DNA of 63,528 nucleotides, filler included, from Octopus bimaculoides (Eukaryota): assembly GCF_001194135.2 (NCBI RefSeq). It is 7 parts of 7 records of this genome, joined end to end, with 100 filler letters (N's around TTAATTAATTAA, not from the genome) between each part and the next. Parts side by side here need not be neighbours in the genome. Positions count along the whole stretch, not along the records: positions 32,702 to 43,857 come from NC_068981.1; 6 more parts are not named here. The stretch is one strand, 5' to 3'. Made by a program: the position numbers and the translations under genes. Under the pieces are notes generated by a model, which searched no databases, had not been told where the DNA came from, and saw only the letters and a list, made by a program, of their open reading frames with translations. Shown piece after piece: positions 32,702 to 43,957 of the stretch. Position 1 is the stretch's first letter; every line of letters begins with the position of its first letter.

Positions 32702-32736
<35 letters not shown>

Positions 32737-34150
32737 TTCAACTACGGTAATAGTTGAATAATATTTTTAACGTAGCTTTTTTGTCACAGTCAGCGTCTTC
32801 CAAGCAGTTTCACTAATTCAGTTTTAATCGAAATCAAATTTACTTTTCTGAATTATGTTTGACAAAGTGATAAGCTACATTTAGATAAGCTGCAGTAGAA
32901 CAAAAGTTAAGACAAAAAGTGTATAGACCAACCTGGTTGACTGACGAGTAATAACAGAAGTCTGCATCTTCGTATCACGTCGGGGGAATTTATGCGGTGG
33001 GAATATATATTCAGTTCCAGGTGTTGATATGGCTGCGTGTATGTTATTACAAGAGTTCATATAGAGATAAAGAATAAATTCAAGAACTATATTTACTACG
33101 TAAAATGTATTTTATTTACTGGTCGGTGATGATACATAATCAAAATGTAGAATGTAGTTGAATGAAGTAATTCATGCAAAAAAGTTCAGTGATAAGAAAT
33201 TTAGAAATAAGTGGTGGTTTTCAGTCATGTGGCATAGAGAAACAGACGGACATAACAATGACGTGAATGGCTCTAAGTTTAATCGACTGAGAAGTGAGAG
33301 CAGGGTTAGCAAGCTGTTTTTATTAATGAAACTACCAAGAGAAACGCTAAGCTTCNNNNNNNNNNNNNNNNNNNNNNNNNNNNNNNNNNNNNNNNNNNNN
33401 NNNNNNNNNNNNNNNNNNNNNNNNNNNNNNNNNNNNNNNNNNNNNNNNNNNNNNNNNNNNNNNNNNNNNNNNNNNNNNNNNNNNNNNNNNNNNNNNNNNN
33501 NNNNNNNNNNNNNNNNNNNNNNNNNNNNNNNNNNNNNNNNNNNNNNNNNNNNNNNNNNNNNNNNNNNNNNNNNNNNNNNNNNNNNNNNNNNNNNNNNNNN
33601 NNNNNNNNNNNNNNNNNNNNNNNNNNNNNNNNNNNNNNNNNNNNNNNNNNNNNNNNNNNNNNNNNNNNNNNNNNNNNNNNNNNNNNNNNNNNNNNNNNNN
33701 NNNNNNNNNNNNNNNNNNNNNNNNNNNNNNNNNNNNNNNNNNNNNNNNNNNNNNNNNNNNNNNNNNNNNNNNNNNNNNNNNNNNNNNNNNNNNNNNNNNN
33801 NNNNNNNNNNNNNNNNNNNNNNNNNNNNNNNNNNNNNNNNNNNNNNNNNNNNNNNNNNNNNNNNNNNNNNNNNNNNNNNNNNNNNNNNNNNNNNNNNNNN
33901 NNNNNNNNNNNNNNNNNNNNNNNNNNNNNNNNNNNNNNNNNNNNNNNNNNNNNNNNNNNNNNNNNNNNNNNNNNNNNNNNNNNNNNNNNNNNNNNNNNNN
34001 NNNNNNNNNNNNNNNNNNNNNNNNNNNNNNNNNNNNNNNNNNNNNNNNNNNNNNNNNNNNNNNNNNNNNNNNNNNNNNNNNNNNNNNNNNNNNNNNNNNN
34101 NNNNNNNNNNNNNNNNNNNNNNNNNNNNNNNNNNNNNNNNNNNNNNNNNA

Positions 34151-35565
34151 AAGGGCCAAAGTGTAATGAATTGCCAGAAAATATTTCTTTCGTAGTAATA
34201 CAACCAAATTTTCTTTATACGGTTAAACCAAGTTTCTATTATTAAATACCAGAAATTTGGGTTTAATGCAGTAGAAATATTAGCTTTCAATATTGCATAG
34301 AGTAGATCATAATCCTGTACTGTAGAAACATTTAAATTGCCATACTTCTCTAATAAACTCGTATTTTGAATGAGAAATGTGCAAGTGGATCTTTGATGTA
34401 ATGTATTATAAGCGATAGTCTCACTTACTCGACTGGGAAGAACGAAGAAGATAAAGTTGAAAGACACGTAACAGATTAACCATACTAACGGACCCCCAAA
34501 CCAGCCGTCTGTATTCTCATAACTTTCTGGGATACCTAATATTAAGGCGCGATGTCCCAACGGTATATCATCTTGGAAAAGTATGTTTGTTGTTTCATAT
34601 AAAAAGAAGTAATGCATCAAAAGATCCAGGAAAATTATTGAAAGAGACGATAGAATAAAAAAGAATCTTCTTAGTTTTGAGGCAACGAAAGTGGAATGGT
34701 GAAAGCAAAATAACCAAGACAGAAAATGAGGGAAATTGTAAGTATTATGGTTTTCGTTGATCCATTCTAAGTTGCATGGCAATGTGTTTTGACGGGATTT
34801 AGCTAATGAAAGAAAACTAATAATTAAGGGAAAATATGCCCATAGAATAGCTCCGACGATATTTGCATAATTGACAAACATACTATGTTCCATGATATTT
34901 CCAGAACAAATCGATTTTGGGTGATAAACATTGCTTCCATTTTTATAGAGTTTACAGCAATAGTTCTTCGCTAATTCTCGATTTATACCCAATCTTCTGT
35001 AAGCTTTTAATGCCTCAGGGCTGTTCTTCTTCATGTCCTGAGATAAATTTATTAGAAAACACATGTGACCAGATTCTCCTCTTTTCAATGTATCGATCAC
35101 TGCGATTTTCTTCAATTCCTGGAAAATCAAATATAGTAAATCATGTCTCTGAATATTTTGTTTTCCACAATTTATATCGATATCAATCCGTGGAGTAGCA
35201 ATGTAAGTTCCTAGTAAATTCAAAGAGCGCATTGAAAAATCATAATAGAAATTCTTATACGCCATCAAACCATCTGGTTCGTCTGGAATCCAGGTAAATT
35301 GTCTCGCGTTCGCGAAATAATCCATTGATACAGGTTTCAGAAGGTCATCTAGCTTTTTATCGGATAAATGGACTTCAAAATTGAAAACCTTTTTATCTGA
35401 TCTTACTAAACGAGATAAAATCATATTGACGTCGGGAGAAATCTTAATTTCACAATTATTTCCAAGTTCCTTCGCTTCTGTGTTTAATGATATTAGAATG
35501 ACAATAAAAGTAATCACAAGGAAAAGTGTACCGGTTGCTGTTATTGTCATCTGCATGGCAGCCAT
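34151..35565 (-). CDS. Uncharacterised signal-peptide plus multi-pass membrane protein, apparently single-exon CDS; 3' part lost in N gap 33356-34150
   Basis: About 471 uninterrupted codons occur in AT-rich DNA. The protein has an N-terminal hydrophobic segment (GTLFLVITFIVILISLNTEA), a cysteine-containing ectodomain of about 195 aa, and then several hydrophobic helices (IVGAILWAYFPLIISFLSL; FFFILSSLSIIFLDLLMHYFFLY; GPLVWLICYVSFNFIFFVLP; IFWQFITLWPF...). A strong splice acceptor lies 10 nt upstream of the ATG. No transposon motifs were seen. Confidence 0.85.
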
Positions 35566-35575
35566 ATTTCGTTTT

Positions 35576-35600
35576 CTGTAAGAGAAAAATAAGATATATA
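35576..35600 (-). promoter_or_regulatory. Splice acceptor of a 5'UTR intron just upstream of the membrane-protein ATG
   Basis: The minus strand reads tcttatttttctcttacag|AAAACGAAATATGGCT, with the AG at 35576-35577. Confidence 0.7.
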
Positions 35601-35849
35601 GAAGTCATAAAATAATGAAGATTCATTTTAGTTTCGTTATTTTGTAAATATTTGAAATAAAGAGTATTTACTTAAAGTAAATGAATGAAGAGCAGGAGAA
35701 CTTGCAGGACGAACATAATAGAACAGTAGTTAAATAGCACATGATTTAGGACAGTAATTCAAACGTCGAATGTGCTTGTTTTCAATTTATCACATTATCT
35801 GATGCAAACTTTACATAACTGAGTTATGGAAAATGTGCACACATATGTT

Positions 35850-37505
35850 TTTGTTTTATAAAGATAACTAGCATAAATGTGAATATAATTGGCCTGATAA
35901 GAAAAAGAAACATAATAGGAGTGACAAAAGAAACGATCCTTGGTGGAAAAAAAGAATACAGATGGGGTTAGATATGCTTTCAGAAAAGAAAAGGGGGAGA
36001 TTAAAAGCAAACAAAAATATAGGGCACTGAACAGAAAGTATGATATTGAAAGAAAGGGCCTGAAAGTGGTAATAGAGGAACTGAAGCAGCGCCTCGTTGC
36101 AAAGAAAGCAAAGATGGTGAGATACGACCAAAGAATGAAGGGATACCAGTAGAATAGGTTATTTAGCGTAGATCAGAAGAAATTCTACAAAGAAATTAAT
36201 GGAGAGTGTACAGATGAAAAGTTGATATCAGATAACATTGAAAGTCAAAGGTTACATCTAGAACAAAAGCAAGGATCACAAGAAAGATGCTGAATGGTTG
36301 CAAGAACTGAAACAAACAGTAGTTTGTCCACAACAGATAGAACTAGACATTTCAGTTAGGGAAGTGAAGGGAATCAGCAAAACAATGGACGACTGGAAAG
36401 CCTCTTGACCAGATGGATTTCAAGGCTACTGGGTCAAAAGATTTAGTGAATGTCATTCCCGAATAGCTGCGCAACTCAACACCTTATTAAATGCCGATCT
36501 AGTAGCACCAGTGTGGTTGACAATGGGTAGGACAATGCTGTGTTTGAAAAACATCGATAACGGCAATACGGTAGACAATTACAGGCCGATATCCTGTTTG
36601 TCACTTACGTGGAAATTATTCACAGGAATAGTCGCAGATTCAATGTAGGGGCATCTCAAAAAAAAAAAATGGAATTCTGCCAGATGAGAAGANNNNNNNN
36701 NNATTATAGTGTTAATAAGGATCAACAACTGGTAGACAAAACTGTACTTAGAGACTAAAAAAGGAGGAAAACTAACATAGCCATTTCATGGATCGATTAT
36801 TGTAAGGCATACGACATGGTTCCACATTCTTGGATTATGGAATGTATGAACCTATTTGGTATTGCATCAAATGTTGAATGATTGGTTGGAAAAAGTATGG
36901 TGAAGCGGAGGACGGAACTGACAGCATATGGAATAAGTTTACGGACAACAGAAATGAGGAGAGGCATCTTCCAAGGGGACTCCCTGTCCCTACTGATCTT
37001 TGCTCTGATTGAAAAAGTGTGGTGTATTATTATTGAAGGGAGGCAAAACTAAATGTATGAACGGGCTAACGATACCATCGGTGGAGGTTATGAAGCAAAT
37101 AGAAGAGACGTGCTACAAGTACTTGGGGATATTGGAAAAGGTTAAATTGATGGAGAAAGAAATGAGAGAAAAATTTAAGGTGGAATACTTATACTTAAGT
37201 CGAAACTGAACGGACGGAATAAGATCGAAGCTATCAACACCTGGGCGGTTCCACTCTTTAGATATGAAGCAGGGATAACCGCGTGAACAGTAGACGAACT
37301 AAACAGCTTAGTCAGAAAGACAAGGAGGTTACTGACTACATATAGGATACTCAACCCAAAACGTGACACAGACAGACTGTATGTACCAAGAAAAAGAGGG
37401 GAAAGTGGACTGATTGGATGCGAACACAGCCTTAGAATAGAAGAAAATAGCATAGAATGGTCTGTAAAAATGCCTCCGAACCGCTATTATTGGAAGTAAG
37501 AAGGT
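35850..37505 (+). mobile_element. Decayed R4/Dong-like non-LTR retrotransposon (RT region, 3'-truncated)
   Basis: Broken frames give EELKQRLVAKKAK..RY, PDGFQGYWVK, NYRPISCL..TWKLFTGI, WIDYCKAYDMVPHSWI, RRGIFQGDSLSPLIF, YKYLGILE, NKIEAINTWAVP and RLYVPRKRG..GLI. Confidence 0.85.
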
Positions 37506-37527
37506 CAGTCTATAATAATAGTAATAA

Positions 37528-37684
<157 letters not shown>

Positions 37685-38029
37685 TAAAAGGATTGACGTA
37701 ACTCTTCTCAAAGTAAAATAGTCAAGAGGAAGAGCGTGATTCGATTGTAATAGATATTTTATTGGTTGAACGATATTTCGTCAGTAAATCTGTCTTTGTC
37801 GAGTTCAAAATAAGAAATGATAAACATCCCCAAATATGGAAATTTAAATTTAAAGTATGAACGAGAGAAAGCGGCGTCCACACGTTCATGGAAGGACATC
37901 ATGAATCTTTAAGTTTCAATTTTATAACAGGCGAAAAGAAAAAGACAGAAAGAAAAGAGAAGGAAAAAAAGAAAAAGAAAAAAGAAGAAGAATATTTAAT
38001 CAAACAGTTTTATATAAATTTGATGATAT

Positions 38030-38660
38030 ATTCTCCTTTCAACCAAAATGACGTCATCAATGAACCTAACCAAAGTATTGGTTCATGACCATGAAGGGAT
38101 TTGAATGTCTTCAGTAGTTGTGTCTCGAATTTCGTCATGAAGACATTAGCGAAATTAATTGCCATGGGAGTACCCATTGCACGACCCCTCTTCTGGTGGT
38201 AGAACCTTTGTCCAAGTTTCATTGTTACAAAGTAACACAAGTCTCAATAATCTACAGAGAAAATTTGGTGGAATACTTTTGTTTGACCGCTTTTCGAAGT
38301 CATCCATGTATGCTTCTGCCCCTTCATCGTGATCAATATTAGGATATAAGGAAGAAACATCCATGGTTACCAAAAAACAGTTCTCGACACGGCCTCGGTA
38401 CTTAATAAAAGTTGATTTTAGACACAAAGTCAAAAGTACCACGAATATAAGAACTGGATCTTTTTGCGACAGGGAGTAGAAAGCCATCCAGCCATTCCGG
38501 AATCTTGGCTGTGCAACATTCATATCCGTTGCAAATTGGGTGTATTGAAGGAAATCTTTCAAACATTTTGTGTATTTTATGGAGACCATAAAATACAGGT
38601 GTTCTTCTTTCTGACCGTAAAATCTTGGATTTCGTCTTTTAGAGCTCGAAGCTATCAAAA
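38030..38660 (-). mobile_element. Penelope-like element reverse transcriptase relic
   Basis: Segments FLVTMDVSSLYPNIDHDEG and FYHQKRGRAMGTPMAINFANVFM occur with frameshifts. Confidence 0.85.
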
Positions 38661-38989
38661 GACGAAATCGGCCAGTAATGTTGCGTACCGTTTAAGGATT
38701 TTTCGAAAACTTGCGATGAGCTTTGTATATCTATTTTTGAAAATGTCAGCCGATGCACCAATATATATGTAGGGAGCTCCTCTAGTACTTAAGGTGCACT
38801 TTTACATGGCATGATTTGATGCAATGTTTATGTACTTTAGGCTTTCATTGGGTTTATGAAATGGTTCGTGCAGTCCAGTATCTAATTGGTGCAGTAAGCT
38901 CCAATATTCAAACTAAGTTGATTTTGCAACTCTAGAATGTGCCTGTACCTTTTTCTTCTGGCAGCTCACCTCGTCTTTCAGTACTGTAA

Positions 38990-39260
38990 GAAGAACAATG
39001 CAGTCAGATCAAATCTTTCACACTGACTCTAAAGAAACTTTCTAATGCTATATGGACATTTAGAAAGTCGGCAGTTGATGCAGTCTTGCAGAATTTATCA
39101 GCACAAGTAGTTGCTCTACACAGAATTGTGGATGATGGGATAATAAAACTGTACCCCTAAGCAGCACGTACGGCAAAGGGTATACTGGGGACACTAAGTC
39201 TATATGAATTCTTAGTTGTTCTTGCATTTTGGAGTAAAGTGCTAGACAAGGCTTTCAATT
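38990..39260 (+). mobile_element. hAT transposase relic
   Basis: TLKKLSNAIWTFRKSAVDAVLQNL...AKGILGTLSLYEFLVVLAFWSKVL resembles the hAT 'LK.LS.TRW' and 'A.GLL..L..FEF...L.FW..IL' segments. Confidence 0.6.
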
Positions 39261-39371
39261 TAGAAGTGATCTTCTGCTAGATGAAGAAAGGTTGGTGTGA
39301 CAGAGAGATAGAAATAGGCAGAAACAAGAAGGATTGTTGTAGAGGTGTTACGTGGTTGTCAGGTCAGAGAG

Positions 39372-39402
<31 letters not shown>

Positions 39403-39879
39403 GGGAGAGAGAGGGGGGGGGGAGAGATGGTGGCGAAATGTCAAGGCATACTCACAAGAAGGAATAGAGATCAGAGTATAAATGGGATGGTAGAATAGAA
39501 CAAGAGAGAGGTAGGTGGTGGCAAAGTGCTAGGCACGCCCTCAAGATACGGGGGTCAGTATATAAAGGGTAGAGTGTTGCCAAATCTGCATGAGTAGGAA
39601 GTAAAGAGTTTGTATGAATTCAAATAGTGTGGGGTTGGGGAATGCAGTGACCGATGAGACTTGGGTAAATGGAGGGGGTGTTGAACAGCAGATTAGCAAA
39701 GGGGTAGTGAGGACAGGATTGGGGTACAAGAGATGAGGATAAGCATAGTGCATGAACGAGAGGAAATGTGAAGAAGAAGAGAGATGTTGTTTGGTTTGTT
39801 GGGGGTGGGGTGTGTGAAAAGTCTTATTGTTAGATGTGGGTGGAACACACAGTGTTTCGAGGATCCAGTCTCACTGAAA

Positions 39880-40015
39880 TCGGCGAGTCATGTTTCTGTG
39901 GAAGACATCACCCAAGTGATTTGCAGTTGCCCAATAATGTCATCAAGGTTCTACCTCCCTATGTGACATGGTGCTGTCGCAGAAACAATATTAAATACCA
40001 TTTTCTGGAACAAAT
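39880..40015 (+). mobile_element. R4/Dong-like LINE zinc-knuckle/RLE-proximal fragment
   Basis: VEDITQVICSCPIMSSRFYLPM*HGAVA resembles 'E...HI.S.CP.....Y..RHD.VA'. Confidence 0.55.
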
Positions 40016-40209
40016 GTAGATAAATCCTTCTTATTAGAATACATACATACATAGAATGGAACATGAGGTGACAAGTGGCGTATTTGGTGTGGAAGACTAT
40101 TTATCGAAAATACGATGAATACTAACTCCAACTCTGAAGTTACAACTACCAGCCTTATTAAATGACTTGTTAATCTTCAGATGAATTAACTGATCGGAGT
40201 GATTTTCGA

Positions 40210-41826
40210 CTTTAAACTTGCAAACCCCAGAGTTATATGACTACATAGCGAAAGAAACTGTTCAATATTATGCGTCCAGGAAGGAGAAAAACGAAACATT
40301 TTCTGTAGATGAATGAAGTTCTAATATATTCCAGTTATCTTAGGTTACCACACACAAACGCACACACACAAGAAATTACTGGTCAAGAAATCGATTCCAG
40401 TATCTTAAAAGCAGCAATCACTTTCACAATAATGAAATCTGGGCGGAGAATAAAGATGATAAAGGTTACGTAGTTCGTTCTCTCTTTACCAGAATTCCTT
40501 CAAGAAATTCAGAATTTTTGAAAAGAGTCTGTCAGTCGATGGTCAAACACTAGGGACATAATTCACTCAAAAAATTTATGAAAGGGAGACCCATAAGATT
40601 TCGTTACAAATTTGGGGCATTGTGCGGGGTCTCAGGATCTTGTTACAACTTTGATCTGCATTATGGAAAGAGTATTCAAGAAGGACCTCAAGACGATCTT
40701 TCACTTGCAAATATAGTTGCTTGGAGTGGTAGATGGTCGTCGGTCACATTCCGTATATTTTGATAATTTATTCACAAAGTTTGATCTGCTAGTGCACCTC
40801 GGGCAAATGGGGTTTGAAGCAACTGCTACGAGAGATAATCGTCTCAAGAGATGTCCTCTAAAGGAAACAGCATTGATGAAAGAGGGGCCAAGAGGTTCAT
40901 ATGATTATAGATTTGAAATCAATAATGAAATCCTTATAGTTAGGTGGCTTGACACTAAATGTGTGGCAATTGGGACTAATTATGATCCAGTCGAACCAAA
41001 TTTGCGATGTACAACGCTAGAGTGAGGATGAAAAAGCAAAAGCAATGTGACTCGACCACATGTTTGGGACTCATATAACAGGGTGAAATTGACAAGCCGG
41101 ACTGGTTGGCGTCAAAATATGCAACCTCAATTAGAGGCATAACGTGGTACAGGCCATTGTTGACTAGAGTTATTGATATGACTGTTGTAAATGCATGGAC
41201 TATTTATAAACTGATCCACGAGGTAAAGGAGGAAACATAAAAATGTACTCGATTTCAGGAGATATCTATGTGCTTCATATCTAAAGCACTCCACTGCGAA
41301 GCAATCTGGACAATAAACAAAGACGAACACAATCCACACCCATAGCTGACGTTAAATTTGATATGAAAGTCCATATAATAGCTAAACGAGATCAGCAACG
41401 ACGTTGTCAGAATAAGTCTTACAGCGGTAAACCACAAAATAATTGTGAAAAGAGCAACGTAACCCTGTGTCTAGATTGTTTTTGTCCATTTCCACCAAGC
41501 ATTGTTTTTTTGAATGGATTTCCTTCAATGCATTATTTTTTGTATGTTTTGTATTTCACTGTATTCTTTCAAAAACTTTAGCTATTTTATATATAAACTT
41601 TAATACCAATAGAATATATTAATAGATAACATATGAAGGATTTTGAATTTATGAGTATATCACATTGTCCCAGGGTCCTCTTTATAGGACACCGTGTATT
41701 TCCATTTCTACTTGAAGTAAAGCAGTTTTTATAATTTATTTTTTGCCTTATACCCTATTTTCAATCATCTTTGAAAATTTAAAGTAATATTCTGAAATTT
41801 CAGTACTTTGGACCCTAATGGGTTAA
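40210..41826 (+). mobile_element. Decayed piggyBac (PGBD-like) transposon with intact 3' end
   Basis: Frameshifted segments include ELYDYIAKETVQYYA, SRNRFQYLKS.NHF, KGRPIRFRYKFGALCG.SG.CYNFDL, VYFDNLFTKFDLL, RGSYDYRF...VRWLDTKCV and a C-terminal Cys-rich-like region. The element ends in GGG-TTAA at 41820-41826. Confidence 0.9.
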
Positions 41827-41860
41827 GTGATTAAAAGCAGAAGAGAGGGAAACATATATA

Positions 41861-42327
41861 TGTAATGAAGATGGATTAGTGATAAAGACGTAAACCTGGT
41901 CGAGGGATATTCAGTTAAGGAGGTATTTATTTTCTTCGTTTTACAAGGAAAGATATCGTTAGGACGAACGACCAAATTGTGGAGAGTTGGGATGTTGCTT
42001 TTCTTCGTGTGATTGTGAAGACAGACAAGGAAATTCAGTTGTGAAGTCAACAGGTCATCTCTTAGCTAGGCCATTCTTTCAGTATTCTCTGTGTGTGGTC
42101 TCCTCAGCACTCTGTGTGGCAGCTCTTAGCGTTGTGTGTTCTCTGTCTCACATCTGTAGCGCTCTGCCGTAGGTGCTTGAGATGAGGTTTTTCTATAGCC
42201 AAATCATCGGATCAGAGAGACAGCTCCAACGGCTAGAATCTCTGCAGTTCTGCAGGTCAGTTCTAGGCGATGTCCCAATTGGTCAGAACCGTGGCATTGG
42301 ATGTACTGACTAAATATTCCTGCTACA
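41861..42327 (-). mobile_element. Probable solo LTR (about 467 bp)
   Basis: The termini are TGTAA...CTACA, set in microsatellite flanks. On the minus strand there is a TATA-like TATAGAAAA near 42190-42198 and AATAAA at 41926-41931. No clean TSD was seen. Confidence 0.5.
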
Positions 42328-42657
42328 CATACATACATACATACATACATACATACATACATACATACATACATACATACATACATACATACGTACGTAC
42401 GTACGTACATACATACAAACAAAGAAAACCACATTGTTGCTGTTGTTGAAATTGAAAGAGCCTTGGATCTAGGTTACAAACCGATTCTTTCTCTATTGGC
42501 AAGAAATCTTGAAATAAAACTGATCAATGACTCTACTGCTAGCACTATGCTTGAACAGGAGTAAATTATTTCTTGTGCATTTGAAATATATAAATATATG
42601 TGTAAATTTGTAAATATACTTGTAAAGATTAGAATCATTCATGCGAATAACCCCTTG

Positions 42658-42704
<47 letters not shown>

Positions 42705-43957
42705 GTCAAGTCAGAAACATTAGCCATATCTAGAAAAGTAAATTTTTAAGTAGATTTACTACTTTTAGTAAAGCGGGTTTTCCAAAACAATATATTTATC
42801 ACTAGAAAACTAAACAATCATGCCTCTATCAGCATTTCTCTTGACAGTCACATCCAATTTGATCTTCAGATGTCAAAATGATAGCCGAAGAAGAAGCATG
42901 AAATTCTATTAGAGAAACGAGCTCGGATTAAAATTTGCCACAAATAACATCCCCTGATCGTTTTATTTACCATTATACAAGAGCAAATCCTTTCTCTTCT
43001 GCAAGTGAGAGACAAGTTCAGTTACCAACAATTAATAACAATACCAAAACTCCAAGTTTATCAACAATTGAGGACTGTTTGGTAAAAGGTTTGAAGCTCA
43101 GAACAACCCAGCAAAACAAAAAAAAATCTAATAAGCAAGAAAACTATTCAAGATCGAATTAAATTTTGAGTAAGTATTTCTCTTGCAGTTGCCTGACTAT
43201 GAAAATAGCATCAGTAATGCTTCTCCCCGTGGCAAAGCTAATCTGGTTTTGGTCCAGCCTAATTCTCTTCCAAACCCTAACCCTGACCAATTCAATGGAG
43301 CAAAGTAATGTTTACTGATGAAACATTAATTTCTAAATACCAAAGCTATTGACCTCAAGGAAGAAGAGCAAACGGTGAGCAGCTGAAGGTAAAGTATACA
43401 GGTTTTAAATGTGACTTTGGTTCCATTATCTACATTCCAATGATGGAGCTTTGTACGTTTGTTAGAAAAGAGCCCCTTCTTCAGGAGAATGTAAAGTATT
43501 AAAACCAGGAGAGAAACATACATACATACATACATACATACATACATACATACATACATACATACATACGTACATACATACATACGTACACACACATACA
43601 CACACATATATACCTACATACATTTAGATACACACATACAAACTTACATGCTCGCACATACACATAGATACCTACATACATACATACAAGCATACACACA
43701 CATACACACATCGATACATAAATGCATACATACAAACACATCCATGCTTTTCGTACATATATACACACACATACATGTATTCATACACACATATATAGAT
43801 GCAGAAATGTTCATTTAGAGATAGAATCATATATATAGAGCGAGAGTAGGGAGAGAGNNNNNNNNNNNNNNNNNNNNNNNNNNNNNNNNNNNNNNNNNNN
43901 NTTAATTAATTAANNNNNNNNNNNNNNNNNNNNNNNNNNNNNNNNNNNNNNNNNNNN

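What the first reader, a model, noticed from the sequence alone, without database searches (positions are those of the whole stretch)
34151..35577. Orphan receptor-like membrane protein: signal peptide, Cys-containing ectodomain, multiple TM helices, intronless CDS
Seen: more than 470 open codons, a cleavable-looking signal (…LNTEA|K), an ectodomain of about 195 aa with six cysteines (including a CC pair), at least 3-4 hydrophobic helices before the gap, and a 5'UTR splice acceptor 10 nt before the ATG. I find no GPCR (DRY, NPxxY), Cys-loop, transporter or TE motifs. Inference: this architecture resembles uncharacterised invertebrate multi-pass proteins that occur as expanded single-exon families, so it is a candidate novel sensory or ligand-binding receptor or channel. 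This is the best candidate for an undescribed system in the window.
Basis: partly seen in the sequence, partly recalled or inferred. Interest (0 to 1): 0.7.

Follow-up and report, generated by a model that had tools for sequence, protein, structure and literature searches.

The report
Uncharacterised mollusc-annelid multi-pass membrane protein gene
This is the first two-thirds of a real octopus gene for a large membrane glycoprotein; its family is conserved in molluscs and at least one annelid but matches no described protein family or solved structure, so its job is unknown.

Summary
On the minus strand an ATG at 35565 opens 471 stop-free codons that run into the N gap (chance about 8e-14). 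They encode a signal peptide, a roughly 200-aa ectodomain with six cysteines, three clear TM helices and the start of a fourth. A splice acceptor lies 10 nt before the ATG.

It is a paralogue (84-85% aa) of octopus "uncharacterized protein" genes of 731-748 aa. These have a single coding exon, sit partly in a tandem cluster and are under purifying selection (dN/dS about 0.3). The family extends to bivalves, a gastropod and the annelid Owenia: 153 clusters at 50% identity, all unnamed, and a single coding exon in every member checked.

No Pfam model matches 70-odd members scanned. No PDB sequence or profile match exists. A confident AlphaFold model (pLDDT 87.7, pTM 0.83) has no Foldseek neighbour in PDB or BFVD.

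UniRef labels two paralogues "STRA6". Every test run here rejects that label.

The architecture fits a cell-surface polytopic protein with a membrane-embedded invariant Glu. Whether this copy is intact cannot be told, because about 265 codons lie in the gap.

The parts
35576..35592 (-). Polypyrimidine tract plus AG splice acceptor (TTATTTTTCTCTTACAG) of a 5'UTR intron
   Evidence: Read directly. Identical in paralogue loci L001, L002 and L003, and similar in L004. Splicing itself was not shown.
35566..35575 (-). 10 nt of 5'UTR within the coding exon (AAAACGAAAT)
35473..35565 (-). Start codon and predicted signal peptide, residues 1-31 (...LNTEA|KELG)
   Evidence: Kyte-Doolittle peak of 2.41 at residues 7-25. 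Low pLDDT for this helix in the model, as is usual for signal peptides. Cleavage is inferred, not tested.
34870..35472 (-). Ectodomain, residues 32-232: alpha/beta, six conserved cysteines (38, 133, 169, 203, 204, 220), sequons N173 and N209
   Evidence: Across the family this region averages 7 Cys and 4.2 sequons, against 0.5 or fewer sequons in every other loop. Modelled at pLDDT 88-96.
34804..34869 (-). TM1 (residues 233-254), containing the family-wide proline (P246 in P0001 numbering)
34669..34803 (-). Loop 1 (residues 255-299), poorly conserved and probably cytoplasmic. It ends in the conserved ASxLRR next to TM2. This copy is 4 residues shorter than P0001 here.
34600..34668 (-). TM2 (residues 300-322)
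34495..34599 (-). Loop 2 (residues 323-357), probably extracellular. It is the most conserved segment of the family (IPLG...ESYENTDGWFG, followed by GP).
34438..34494 (-). TM3 (residues 358-376), starting at the near-invariant GGP
34186..34437 (-). Helical domain between TM3 and TM4 (residues 377-460), probably cytoplasmic (family mean net charge +6.4). Conserved motifs: P377, SETIAY, TFLIQ, YDLLYA, NPNFW and R449.
34151..34185 (-). Start of TM4 (residues 461-471, NIFWQFITLWP), cut off by the assembly gap
   Evidence: Aligns to P0001 residues 465-475.
33356..34150 (.). Assembly gap (795 N) hiding the remaining roughly 265 codons: TM4 onward (five or six more TM helices) and the C-terminal tail, including the family's invariant intramembrane Glu
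   Evidence: Full-length relatives are 731-748 aa. tblastn of P0001 finds nothing beyond residue 476 in the piece. The sequence past the gap (32963-33355) matches the flank of the same locus in the O. bimaculoides chromosome assembly, which has its own gap inside this gene.

Best explanation
Shown:
- The feature is the 5' 471 codons of a real protein-coding gene on the minus strand, with a single coding exon.
- It belongs to a small octopus paralogue group of 731-748 aa. At least three copies lie within about 135 kb on O. bimaculoides chromosome CM046601.1, and another lies on a different chromosome.
- The group is part of an old family found in cephalopods, bivalves, gastropods and the annelid Owenia.
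- The family has no Pfam model, no named member, no PDB relative by sequence or profile, and no Foldseek neighbour for a confident AlphaFold model.
- Architecture: signal peptide; a roughly 200-aa alpha/beta ectodomain with three conserved cysteine pairs and most of the N-glycan sequons; TM1-TM3 with a highly conserved TM2-TM3 loop; a basic 85-95-aa helical domain; then five or six more TM helices (9 or 10 in all), with a 97%-conserved Glu inside TM4.

Inferred:
- The ectodomain faces outside or the lumen.
- The TM3-TM4 domain and the C-terminus face the cytoplasm, so a 9-TM, N-out/C-in topology fits the positive-inside rule best.

Mechanism I commit to, with low confidence (about 0.3): a cell-surface polytopic glycoprotein. 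Its disulfide-locked ectodomain binds an extracellular partner, and its helix bundle, built around the buried Glu, moves an ion or small molecule. That makes it a receptor-coupled transporter or channel, rather than an enzyme or a G-protein-coupled receptor.
For: Gene reality:
- ORF chance is about 8e-14.
- The protein is 84-85% identical to P0001 and P0002 over all 471 aa, E about 1e-267.
- dN/dS is 0.27-0.30 between old paralogues and 0.35-0.6 between recent ones.
- The splice acceptor is conserved.
- The window-specific motif QELKKIAVIDTLK is shared with O. vulgaris proteins P0015 and P0029.

Family breadth:
- 153 clusters at 50% identity have E <= 1e-3, and 128 have E <= 1e-10.
- Named members come from Mercenaria, Ostrea, Mytilus, Mactra, Potamilus, Ruditapes, Haliotis, Owenia, Octopus and Argonauta. 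All are labelled 'uncharacterized' or 'hypothetical'.
- Every member checked has a single coding exon.
- Mercenaria has a tandem pair at 60% identity.

No known relatives:
- Pfam is negative for the window protein and 70-odd members.
- PDB is negative by phmmer and by two profiles.
- The AlphaFold model has pLDDT 87.7 and pTM 0.83. Its best Foldseek hit is E 0.17 in PDB (TM <= 0.11) and E 0.53 in BFVD.

Topology and mechanism hints:
- The ectodomain averages 7 Cys and 4.2 sequons. The TM3-TM4 domain has net charge +6.4. The loop after TM 583-601 has net +2.7.
- Residues conserved across the family are Cys, Pro, Gly and aromatics, plus R301, R304, R453 and E490. There is no His/Asp/Ser constellation that would suggest catalysis.
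Against: - No functional, expression or localisation data of any kind were obtained.
- The ectodomain is no more variable than the rest of the protein, and copy number is modest. That is not the pattern of a diversifying chemoreceptor or immune receptor.
- No internal repeat of the kind common in transporters was detected by sequence.
- Foldseek is weak on all-helical membrane folds, and only the whole chain could be searched. No AlphaFold DB library and no domain-wise search were available, so a distant structural relative may have been missed.
- The window copy lacks its last third. It differs from the same locus in the chromosome assembly with dN/dS about 1 (19 non-synonymous and 5 synonymous changes), and it carries His at a site that is Tyr in 90% or more of cephalopod relatives. 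This particular copy may therefore not be functional.
Confidence: 0.55

Rival explanations
1. This copy is a truncated or decaying duplicate (a pseudogene) of a functional family. Only the 5' 1.4 kb survives or is intact.
For: - The last roughly 265 codons are unsequenced here, and the same gene also has a gap in the chromosome-level assembly, where NCBI models only a 314-aa product.
- Sequence past the gap shares nothing with the 3' flank of the paralogues.
- dN/dS against that locus is about 1, and the window has the Y167H change at a nearly invariant site.
Against: - 471 codons remain open.
- dN/dS against other paralogues is 0.27-0.62.
- Most of the differences from L002 sit in a block shared with O. 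vulgaris proteins. That points to a chimeric assembly or gene conversion in one of the two assemblies rather than to decay.
- The duplicated unit in the paralogues extends only about 113 nt past the stop, so a non-matching flank is expected.
Confidence: 0.2
2. It is a membrane-embedded enzyme or an organellar (ER, Golgi or lysosomal) protein. The disulfide-bonded domain would then be lumenal, and the protein would not be a cell-surface receptor, transporter or channel.
For: - The topology evidence (Cys, sequons, positive-inside rule) cannot tell the lumen from the cell exterior.
- Even conservation and purifying selection across all regions suit a housekeeping-type activity.
- The TM2-TM3 loop on the lumenal or outer face is the most conserved segment.
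Against: - There is no family-wide conserved His, Asp, Ser or Lys set. Only Arg residues and one buried Glu are conserved.
- No Pfam transferase, hydrolase or GT-C-type family hits any member.
- Lineage-specific tandem duplication is less typical of core biosynthetic enzymes.
Confidence: 0.2
3. It is an invertebrate STRA6-type retinol-binding-protein receptor, as UniRef names two O. bimaculoides paralogues (P0008, P0009).
For: - The UniRef name 'Receptor for retinol uptake STRA6'.
- The size of the membrane part is similar, and a 9-TM N-out/C-in topology is possible.
Against: - No member of this family does, even at E <= 10 or E <= 1, depending on the scan.
- Family profiles do not find 5SY1 at E <= 10.
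- hhalign of the 97-sequence profile against STRA6 and against a 17-sequence STRA6 profile gives probability 0.2%.
- 5SY1 is not among the top 50 Foldseek hits.
- STRA6 has no 200-aa disulfide-bonded N-terminal domain (established knowledge of 5SY1).
- STRA6 and its ligand RBP4 are reported absent from the annelid Platynereis (PMC5821490).
Confidence: 0.03
4. It is a domesticated or active transposable-element or viral gene. Intronless, tandemly repeated CDS is typical of such genes.
For: - The CDS is intronless in all species checked.
- The locus is surrounded by TE debris, including a piggyBac remnant and RT-like fragments.
- The duplication unit is barely larger than the exon.
Against: - No TE or viral Pfam domain hits any member.
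- There is no BFVD structural neighbour.
- The duplication unit includes a conserved intron 3' end and acceptor upstream of the ATG, so the copies arose from DNA-level duplication, not retroposition.
- The family is under purifying selection and is shared by two phyla.
- No terminal repeats were seen.
Confidence: 0.02

Closest known systems
Octopus 'uncharacterized protein' paralogues (O. bimaculoides LOC106877666, LOC106877664, LOC128249435, LOC106875165; O. sinensis LOC115209402 and others) and their bivalve, gastropod and annelid relatives
   Same: - 67-93% amino-acid identity to the octopus copies, aligned end to end.
- The same signal peptide, six cysteines, GGP/NPNFW/R motifs, single coding exon and acceptor just upstream of the ATG.
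- The window corresponds to the LOC128249435 locus (96.8-98.5% nucleotide identity).
   Different: - None of these proteins has been characterised, so membership says nothing about function.
- The window copy is incomplete.
- It differs from the chromosome-assembly version by a cluster of substitutions at CDS nt 358-499.
STRA6 / RBP_receptor (Pfam PF14752; zebrafish structure 5SY1)
   Same: A large polytopic protein with an extracellular N-terminus, possibly nine TM helices and a cytoplasmic C-terminus. UniRef gives this name to two paralogues.
   Different: - No sequence, profile, profile-profile or fold similarity.
- This family has a roughly 200-aa disulfide-bonded ectodomain and a signal peptide that STRA6 lacks.
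- The STRA6 ligand system is reported absent from annelids.
Polytopic proteins that pair an N-terminal helix and a roughly 200-aa cysteine-containing extracellular domain with a multi-helix core (polycystin/TRPP channels, SLC44 choline-transporter-like proteins, Wntless/GOST proteins). This comparison comes from memory and is a lead only.
   Same: The general layout: a first hydrophobic helix, a glycosylated disulfide-bonded outer domain, then a helix bundle.
   Different: - No Pfam hit to PKD_channel, Choline_transpo or related models in any member.
- PKD2 and TRP chains appear only as noise in Foldseek (E > 1, TM <= 0.1).
- The helix count differs (9-10 here, against 6 to 8 in polycystins and Wntless).
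Octopus chemotactile receptors (Cys-loop, nicotinic-receptor-like) and invertebrate chemosensory GPCRs
   Same: Lineage-specific, tandemly duplicated membrane proteins with few or no introns and an extracellular ligand-binding part.
   Different: - No Neur_chan or 7tm Pfam match.
- The ectodomain is alpha/beta rather than a beta-sandwich, and there are 9-10 TM helices rather than 4 or 7.
- There are only about 8-10 copies per octopus genome, and the ectodomain evolves no faster than the rest.

Membership tests
Unnamed mollusc/annelid family (LOC106877666-like) | End-to-end alignment with full-length members | tested here: met
   All 471 aa are covered. Identity is 84-85% to P0001 and P0002 (E about 1e-267) and 33-37% to P0023-P0025.
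Unnamed mollusc/annelid family (LOC106877666-like) | Six conserved ectodomain cysteines, including a CC pair | tested here: met
   The window has C38, C133, C169, C203, C204 and C220. These are 82-100% conserved family-wide.
Unnamed mollusc/annelid family (LOC106877666-like) | GGP at the start of TM3, Pro after TM3, and the F-W...R motif before TM4 | tested here: met
   The window has G357-G358-P359, P377, F438-W439 and R449. These equal P0001 G361, G362, P363, P381, F442, W443 and R453.
Unnamed mollusc/annelid family (LOC106877666-like) | Buried Glu in TM4 (E490), P501, and the C-terminal helices with P577, Y592, Y604, P646 and P695 | not testable with these tools
   This part of the window gene lies in the N gap at 33356-34150.
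Unnamed mollusc/annelid family (LOC106877666-like) | Single coding exon | tested here: met
   The window has 1415 nt uninterrupted. Relatives' gene span equals CDS length in Octopus (three genes), an ENA cephalopod-like assembly, Mercenaria, Owenia and Ostrea.
STRA6 / RBP_receptor | Match to Pfam PF14752 | tested here: not met
   No hit for the window protein or for 70-odd relatives, including the two that UniRef names STRA6. The positive control, human STRA6, scores 2e-261.
STRA6 / RBP_receptor | Sequence or profile similarity to solved STRA6 (5SY1) | tested here: not met
   phmmer and two family profiles find nothing at E <= 10. The control scores 3e-169. hhalign probability is 0.2%.
STRA6 / RBP_receptor | Shared fold | tested here: not met
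   A Foldseek search of the pLDDT-87.7 model against PDB did not place 5SY1 among the 50 hits shown, and the best hit overall had E 0.17. Caveat: only the whole chain was searched.
STRA6 / RBP_receptor | Nine TM helices, N-terminus outside, C-terminus inside | tested here: inconclusive
   Charge statistics favour 9 TM with N-out/C-in, but 10 TM is not excluded.
STRA6 / RBP_receptor | Binds holo-RBP4 and transports retinol; binds calmodulin | not testable with these tools
   The literature reports RBP4 and STRA6 absent from the annelid Platynereis (PMC5821490).
G-protein-coupled receptors | Seven TM helices and a 7tm-type Pfam match | tested here: not met
   The model and hydropathy scan show 9-10 TM helices. 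No 7tm family appears at E <= 10 or E <= 1, depending on the scan.
Cys-loop ligand-gated channels (including octopus chemotactile receptors) | Beta-sandwich ligand-binding domain with a Cys-loop, plus four TM helices | tested here: not met
   No Neur_chan_LBD or Neur_chan_memb hit. The ectodomain is predicted alpha/beta and there are 9-10 TM helices.
Transposable-element or viral proteins | TE or viral protein domain, or a structural neighbour among viral proteins | tested here: not met
   Pfam is negative. The best BFVD hit has E 0.53 and TM 0.09.

The most novel reading that the evidence does not exclude
The family is a structurally new class of lophotrochozoan cell-surface receptor-channel or receptor-transporter. 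A disulfide-locked ectodomain would gate a helix bundle built around a buried glutamate, and octopus would use its tandem paralogues in chemotactile or other environmental sensing.
Probability: 0.12. Interest if true: 0.8.

Novelty: categorically new. Interest (0 to 1): 0.45.

Why it matters
Molluscs and annelids carry many conserved genes with no counterpart in model organisms. This family is a clean example:

- It is large, ancient (shared by at least two phyla) and under purifying selection.
- It folds confidently in silico.
- It has no Pfam entry, no named member and no detectable structural relative.

If it proves to be a transporter, channel or receptor of a new fold, it would add a membrane-protein class known so far only from spiralian animals. 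It would also give cephalopod and bivalve biology a new handle on sensing, immunity or transport.

More immediately, the analysis shows that the only functional label attached to the family in public databases (STRA6) is unsupported and should not be propagated.

Caveat on the novelty rating: "categorically new" refers to the protein family and fold as far as it could be tested here. The sequences themselves are already in public databases as uncharacterised predictions. No AlphaFold DB or domain-wise structure search could be run.

Tried and rejected
- **STRA6 homology.** Rejected after a positive-control-backed set of tests.
- **GPCR, Cys-loop, transporter and TE families.** Rejected via Pfam on the window protein and on 70-odd relatives scanned.
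- **First AlphaFold run.** The 13-sequence cephalopod alignment gave pLDDT 51 and was discarded. The 97-sequence alignment was needed.
- **Profile search with the word-indexed database.** It returned only octopus proteins, because only the 8000 candidates sharing most words were scored, so it added nothing on range.
- **Sequence-level internal repeats.** Searched between TM blocks; none found.
- **Logan contigs as transcript evidence.** The roughly 3.7-kb contigs carrying the oyster homologue are collinear with the genome at 99.9% over their whole length. They cannot tell mRNA from DNA.
- **Literature searches.** Twelve LOC identifiers gave no paper. Searches on STRA6 plus octopus, molluscs or Lophotrochozoa, and on spiralian-specific membrane families, found no paper describing this family.
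- **C-terminus beyond the gap.** tblastn found none, either in the window or in the same locus of the chromosome assembly.
- **One failed call.** A Pfam scan of all 97 members at once exceeded the residue limit and was repeated with 59 members.
Full report
**1. What is in the sequence**

Within the piece (32702-43857) the only long ORF lies on the minus strand. Its ATG is at 35565-35563, and 471 complete codons follow down to 34151, where a run of 795 N begins. The piece is 36% GC, so a stop is expected in 6.2% of codons. A 471-codon open frame then has a chance of about 8e-14.

The product begins MAAMQMTITATGTLFLVITFIVILISLNTEA|KELG: a hydrophobic core followed by small residues at -3 and -1. 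Residues 32-232 contain exactly six cysteines (38, 133, 169, 203, 204, 220) and two N-glycan sequons. A hydropathy scan gives three strong TM segments at 236-254, 304-322 and 358-376, with the beginning of a fourth at the gap edge.

Upstream of the ATG the minus strand reads TTATTTTTCTCTTACAG AAAACGAAAT ATG. This is a polypyrimidine tract and an AG 10 nt before the start codon.

**2. It is a real gene with close paralogues**

The protein is 84-85% identical over its whole length to two O. bimaculoides proteins, LOC106877666 (P0001, 736 aa) and LOC106877664 (P0002, 734 aa). It is 67-80% identical to further O. bimaculoides and O. sinensis proteins, 54% to one from Argonauta, and 33-37% to three proteins from an ENA assembly. 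All are labelled "uncharacterized", and none carries a precomputed Pfam domain.

P0001, P0002 and P0008 are each encoded by one uninterrupted exon of 2211, 2205 and 2244 nt.

At the DNA level the window corresponds to the LOC128249435 locus of the chromosome-scale O. bimaculoides assembly. Identity is 96.8% over the 5' 1064 nt and 98.5% in the flank beyond the gap. That assembly also has a gap inside this gene, which explains NCBI's truncated 314-aa model.

Three copies (L002, L001, L003) lie within about 135 kb of chromosome CM046601.1, and a fourth lies on CM046605.1. The unit duplicated between L001 and L003 runs from about 240 nt upstream of the ATG to about 113 nt past the stop. The acceptor tract is conserved base for base among the clustered copies. 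The copies therefore arose by DNA duplication, not retroposition.

Pairwise dN/dS is 0.27-0.30 between the old paralogues and 0.35-0.62 between recent ones, and it is similar in the ectodomain and the membrane part. The family is under purifying selection.

**3. State of this particular copy**

The last roughly 265 codons are in the gap, and no C-terminal coding sequence is found beyond it.

Against the same locus in the chromosome assembly, the window differs at 24 coding positions (19 non-synonymous, 5 synonymous). Thirteen of these are clustered at CDS nt 358-499. In that block the chromosome assembly agrees with the neighbouring paralogues. The window's version (…IFQELKKIAVIDTLK…) recurs instead in O. 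vulgaris proteins P0015 and P0029.

The window sequence is therefore a genuine, conserved paralogue type. The discrepancy looks like paralogue mixing in one of the two assemblies, or gene conversion. His at residue 167, where 90% or more of cephalopod relatives have Tyr, is unique to the window. Intactness of this copy cannot be decided.

**4. The family is much wider than cephalopods**

A profile of 13 cephalopod sequences was searched against 1.84 billion representative proteins. It found 153 clusters (50% identity) at E <= 1e-3 and 128 at E <= 1e-10. Most are 730-870 aa and align end to end.

I looked up the source names of 30 clusters. Those that had names came from:
- the bivalves Mercenaria, Ostrea, Mytilus (five species), Mactra, Potamilus and Ruditapes;
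- the gastropod Haliotis (three species);
- the annelid Owenia fusiformis (two clusters).

All were "uncharacterized", "hypothetical" or "unnamed". No name from another phylum appeared, but 120 clusters were not looked up.

The coding sequence is a single exon in the ENA cephalopod-like assembly, in Mercenaria, in Owenia and in Ostrea. In Mercenaria a second single-exon copy, 60% identical, lies 6.5 kb away. Intronless coding sequence and local tandem duplication are thus old properties of the family.

**5. Search for known relatives**

- *Pfam.* It gives nothing for the window protein at E <= 10 and nothing significant for 20 relatives. Among 59 diverse members scanned at E <= 1, no family was hit by more than one member and none reached its cut-off.
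- *PDB sequences.* phmmer and two profiles (13 and 97 sequences) give only noise, with E of 0.34 or worse.
- *Structure.* A first AlphaFold run with the shallow alignment failed (pLDDT 51). With the 97-sequence alignment the 736-aa paralogue P0001 folds with mean pLDDT 87.7 and pTM 0.83, and 456 residues score above 90.
- *Foldseek.* Searching that model against 350,542 PDB chains gives no hit at E <= 0.001. The best is E 0.17 with TM-scores of 0.11 or less, and the list is the usual mix of long-helix proteins such as ABC exporters, TRP channels and ClyA. BFVD gives nothing either.

Limits: only the whole chain could be searched, no AlphaFold DB library was available, and Foldseek is insensitive for all-helical membrane folds.

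**6. The STRA6 label**

UniRef names two paralogues (P0008, P0009) "Receptor for retinol uptake STRA6".

It matches Pfam PF14752 end to end at 2e-261 and zebrafish STRA6 (5SY1) at 3e-169. All 120 of its listed database relatives carry PF14752.

The octopus family fails every corresponding test:
- no PF14752 match;
- no profile hit to 5SY1;
- hhalign probability 0.2% against STRA6 and against a 17-species STRA6 profile;
- no 5SY1 among the Foldseek hits shown.

In addition, STRA6 and its ligand RBP4 are reported absent from the annelid Platynereis (PMC5821490). The label is unsupported.

**7. Anatomy and likely topology**

From the model's secondary structure and the family alignment, in P0001 numbering:
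- a signal helix;
- an alpha/beta ectodomain (39-225, pLDDT 88-96);
- TM1 (228-253);
- a variable loop;
- a long TM2 (297-335);
- a 25-residue loop, the best-conserved segment of the family (IPLG…S..N.DGFFGGP);
- TM3;
- an 85-residue helical domain (SETIAY, TFLIQ, YDLLYA, NPxFW…R);
- a helical hairpin (466-499 and 501-523);
- a 49-residue hydrophobic helix (527-575);
- a 42-residue helix (577-618);
- a beta-hairpin with a short helix;
- two more TM helices and a C-terminal helix.

Family-wide, the ectodomain averages 7 cysteines and 4.2 sequons, against 0.5 or fewer sequons in every other loop. The TM3-TM4 domain has net charge +6.4, and the loop after the 583-601 helix has net +2.7. The bivalve C-terminal tails are rich in Lys and Arg.

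Under the positive-inside rule this favours an outside or lumenal N-terminal domain, a cytoplasmic TM3-TM4 domain, nine membrane spans and a cytoplasmic C-terminus. Ten spans are not excluded.

Residues conserved in 75% or more of a de-redundified alignment are six Cys, several Pro, Gly and aromatic residues, R301, R304, R453 and E490. E490 lies in the middle of TM4 and is 97% conserved. There is no conserved His/Asp/Ser/Lys set of the kind expected for a hydrolase or transferase. No internal sequence repeat was detected. Conservation is even along the protein, and the ectodomain is neither hypervariable nor faster-evolving.

**8. Interpretation**

Shown: a real, conserved, selectively constrained gene family encoding a large polytopic glycoprotein, with no detectable relation to any characterised family.

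Inferred: the topology and the three disulfides.

Committed guess, at about 0.3: a cell-surface protein that binds something with its ectodomain and moves an ion or small molecule through a bundle organised around the buried Glu. This is a receptor-coupled transporter or channel. I prefer it to an enzyme because no catalytic constellation is conserved, and to a GPCR because the helix count and fold are wrong.

The main rivals are an organellar or enzymatic role for the family, and pseudogene status for this copy.

**9. Verdict**

- The family is undescribed and structurally unplaced with the tools at hand, although its members already sit in databases as uncharacterised predictions.
- Interest is moderate. 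It would rise sharply if domain-wise structure searches stay empty and a transport or sensing activity is found.

Noticed in passing
window 40554-41237 (+): A broken piggyBac-type transposase remnant. Two fragments match Pfam DDE_Tnp_1_7 at 4.5e-09 and 1.5e-04, covering profile positions 205-281 and 310-349, and are split over different frames by stops.
   Followed up: partly
window 36409-36645 (+) and 38013-38691 (-): Frame fragments that look like reverse-transcriptase pieces of retroelements (…PDGFQGYW…NYRPISCL…; …MDVSSLYPNIDHDEG…; …RGRAMGTPMAINFANVFM…). Pfam did not confirm them at E <= 0.01, so this rests on motif recognition only.
   Followed up: partly
window 37528-37684; 42327-42421 and 43516-43738; 32702-32735 and 42659-42702: Microsatellites. 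Three abutting perfect trinucleotide arrays, (TCT)17, (TAC)23 and (TAT)13; two (ACAT)n arrays that produce the 'YVCM' pseudo-ORFs; and (TA)n runs.
   Followed up: yes
window 34151-35565 compared with L002 10001-10732: The window and the same locus in the O. bimaculoides chromosome assembly differ by 34 positions over the aligned CDS plus 330 nt upstream (24 of them coding). Thirteen are clustered at CDS nt 358-499. There the chromosome assembly matches the neighbouring paralogues, while the window matches O. vulgaris proteins P0015 and P0029. This suggests paralogue mixing in one of the assemblies, or gene conversion.
   Followed up: partly
proteins P0008 and P0009 (O. bimaculoides, UniRef): The database name 'Receptor for retinol uptake STRA6' is attached to members of this family without any detectable STRA6 similarity. 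It is likely an automatic mis-annotation.
   Followed up: yes
L004 1-12244 (O. bimaculoides CM046605.1) and protein P0246 (O. vulgaris): The paralogue LOC106875165 lies 2.5 kb downstream of a gelsolin gene. The 1010-aa O. vulgaris model P0246 carries gelsolin Pfam domains and matches this family over its C-terminal part (residues 647-900). It is probably a fused gene model.
   Followed up: partly
L006 974-3499 and 10001-12472 (Mercenaria mercenaria CM038760.1): Two single-exon family members (841 and 823 aa, 60% identical) sit 6.5 kb apart on the same strand. Tandem duplication of this family therefore also occurs in bivalves.
   Followed up: yes
window about 36690-36700: A second, very short run of N (9 bases) inside the retroelement-like region, seen as XXXX in two frame translations.
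   Followed up: no
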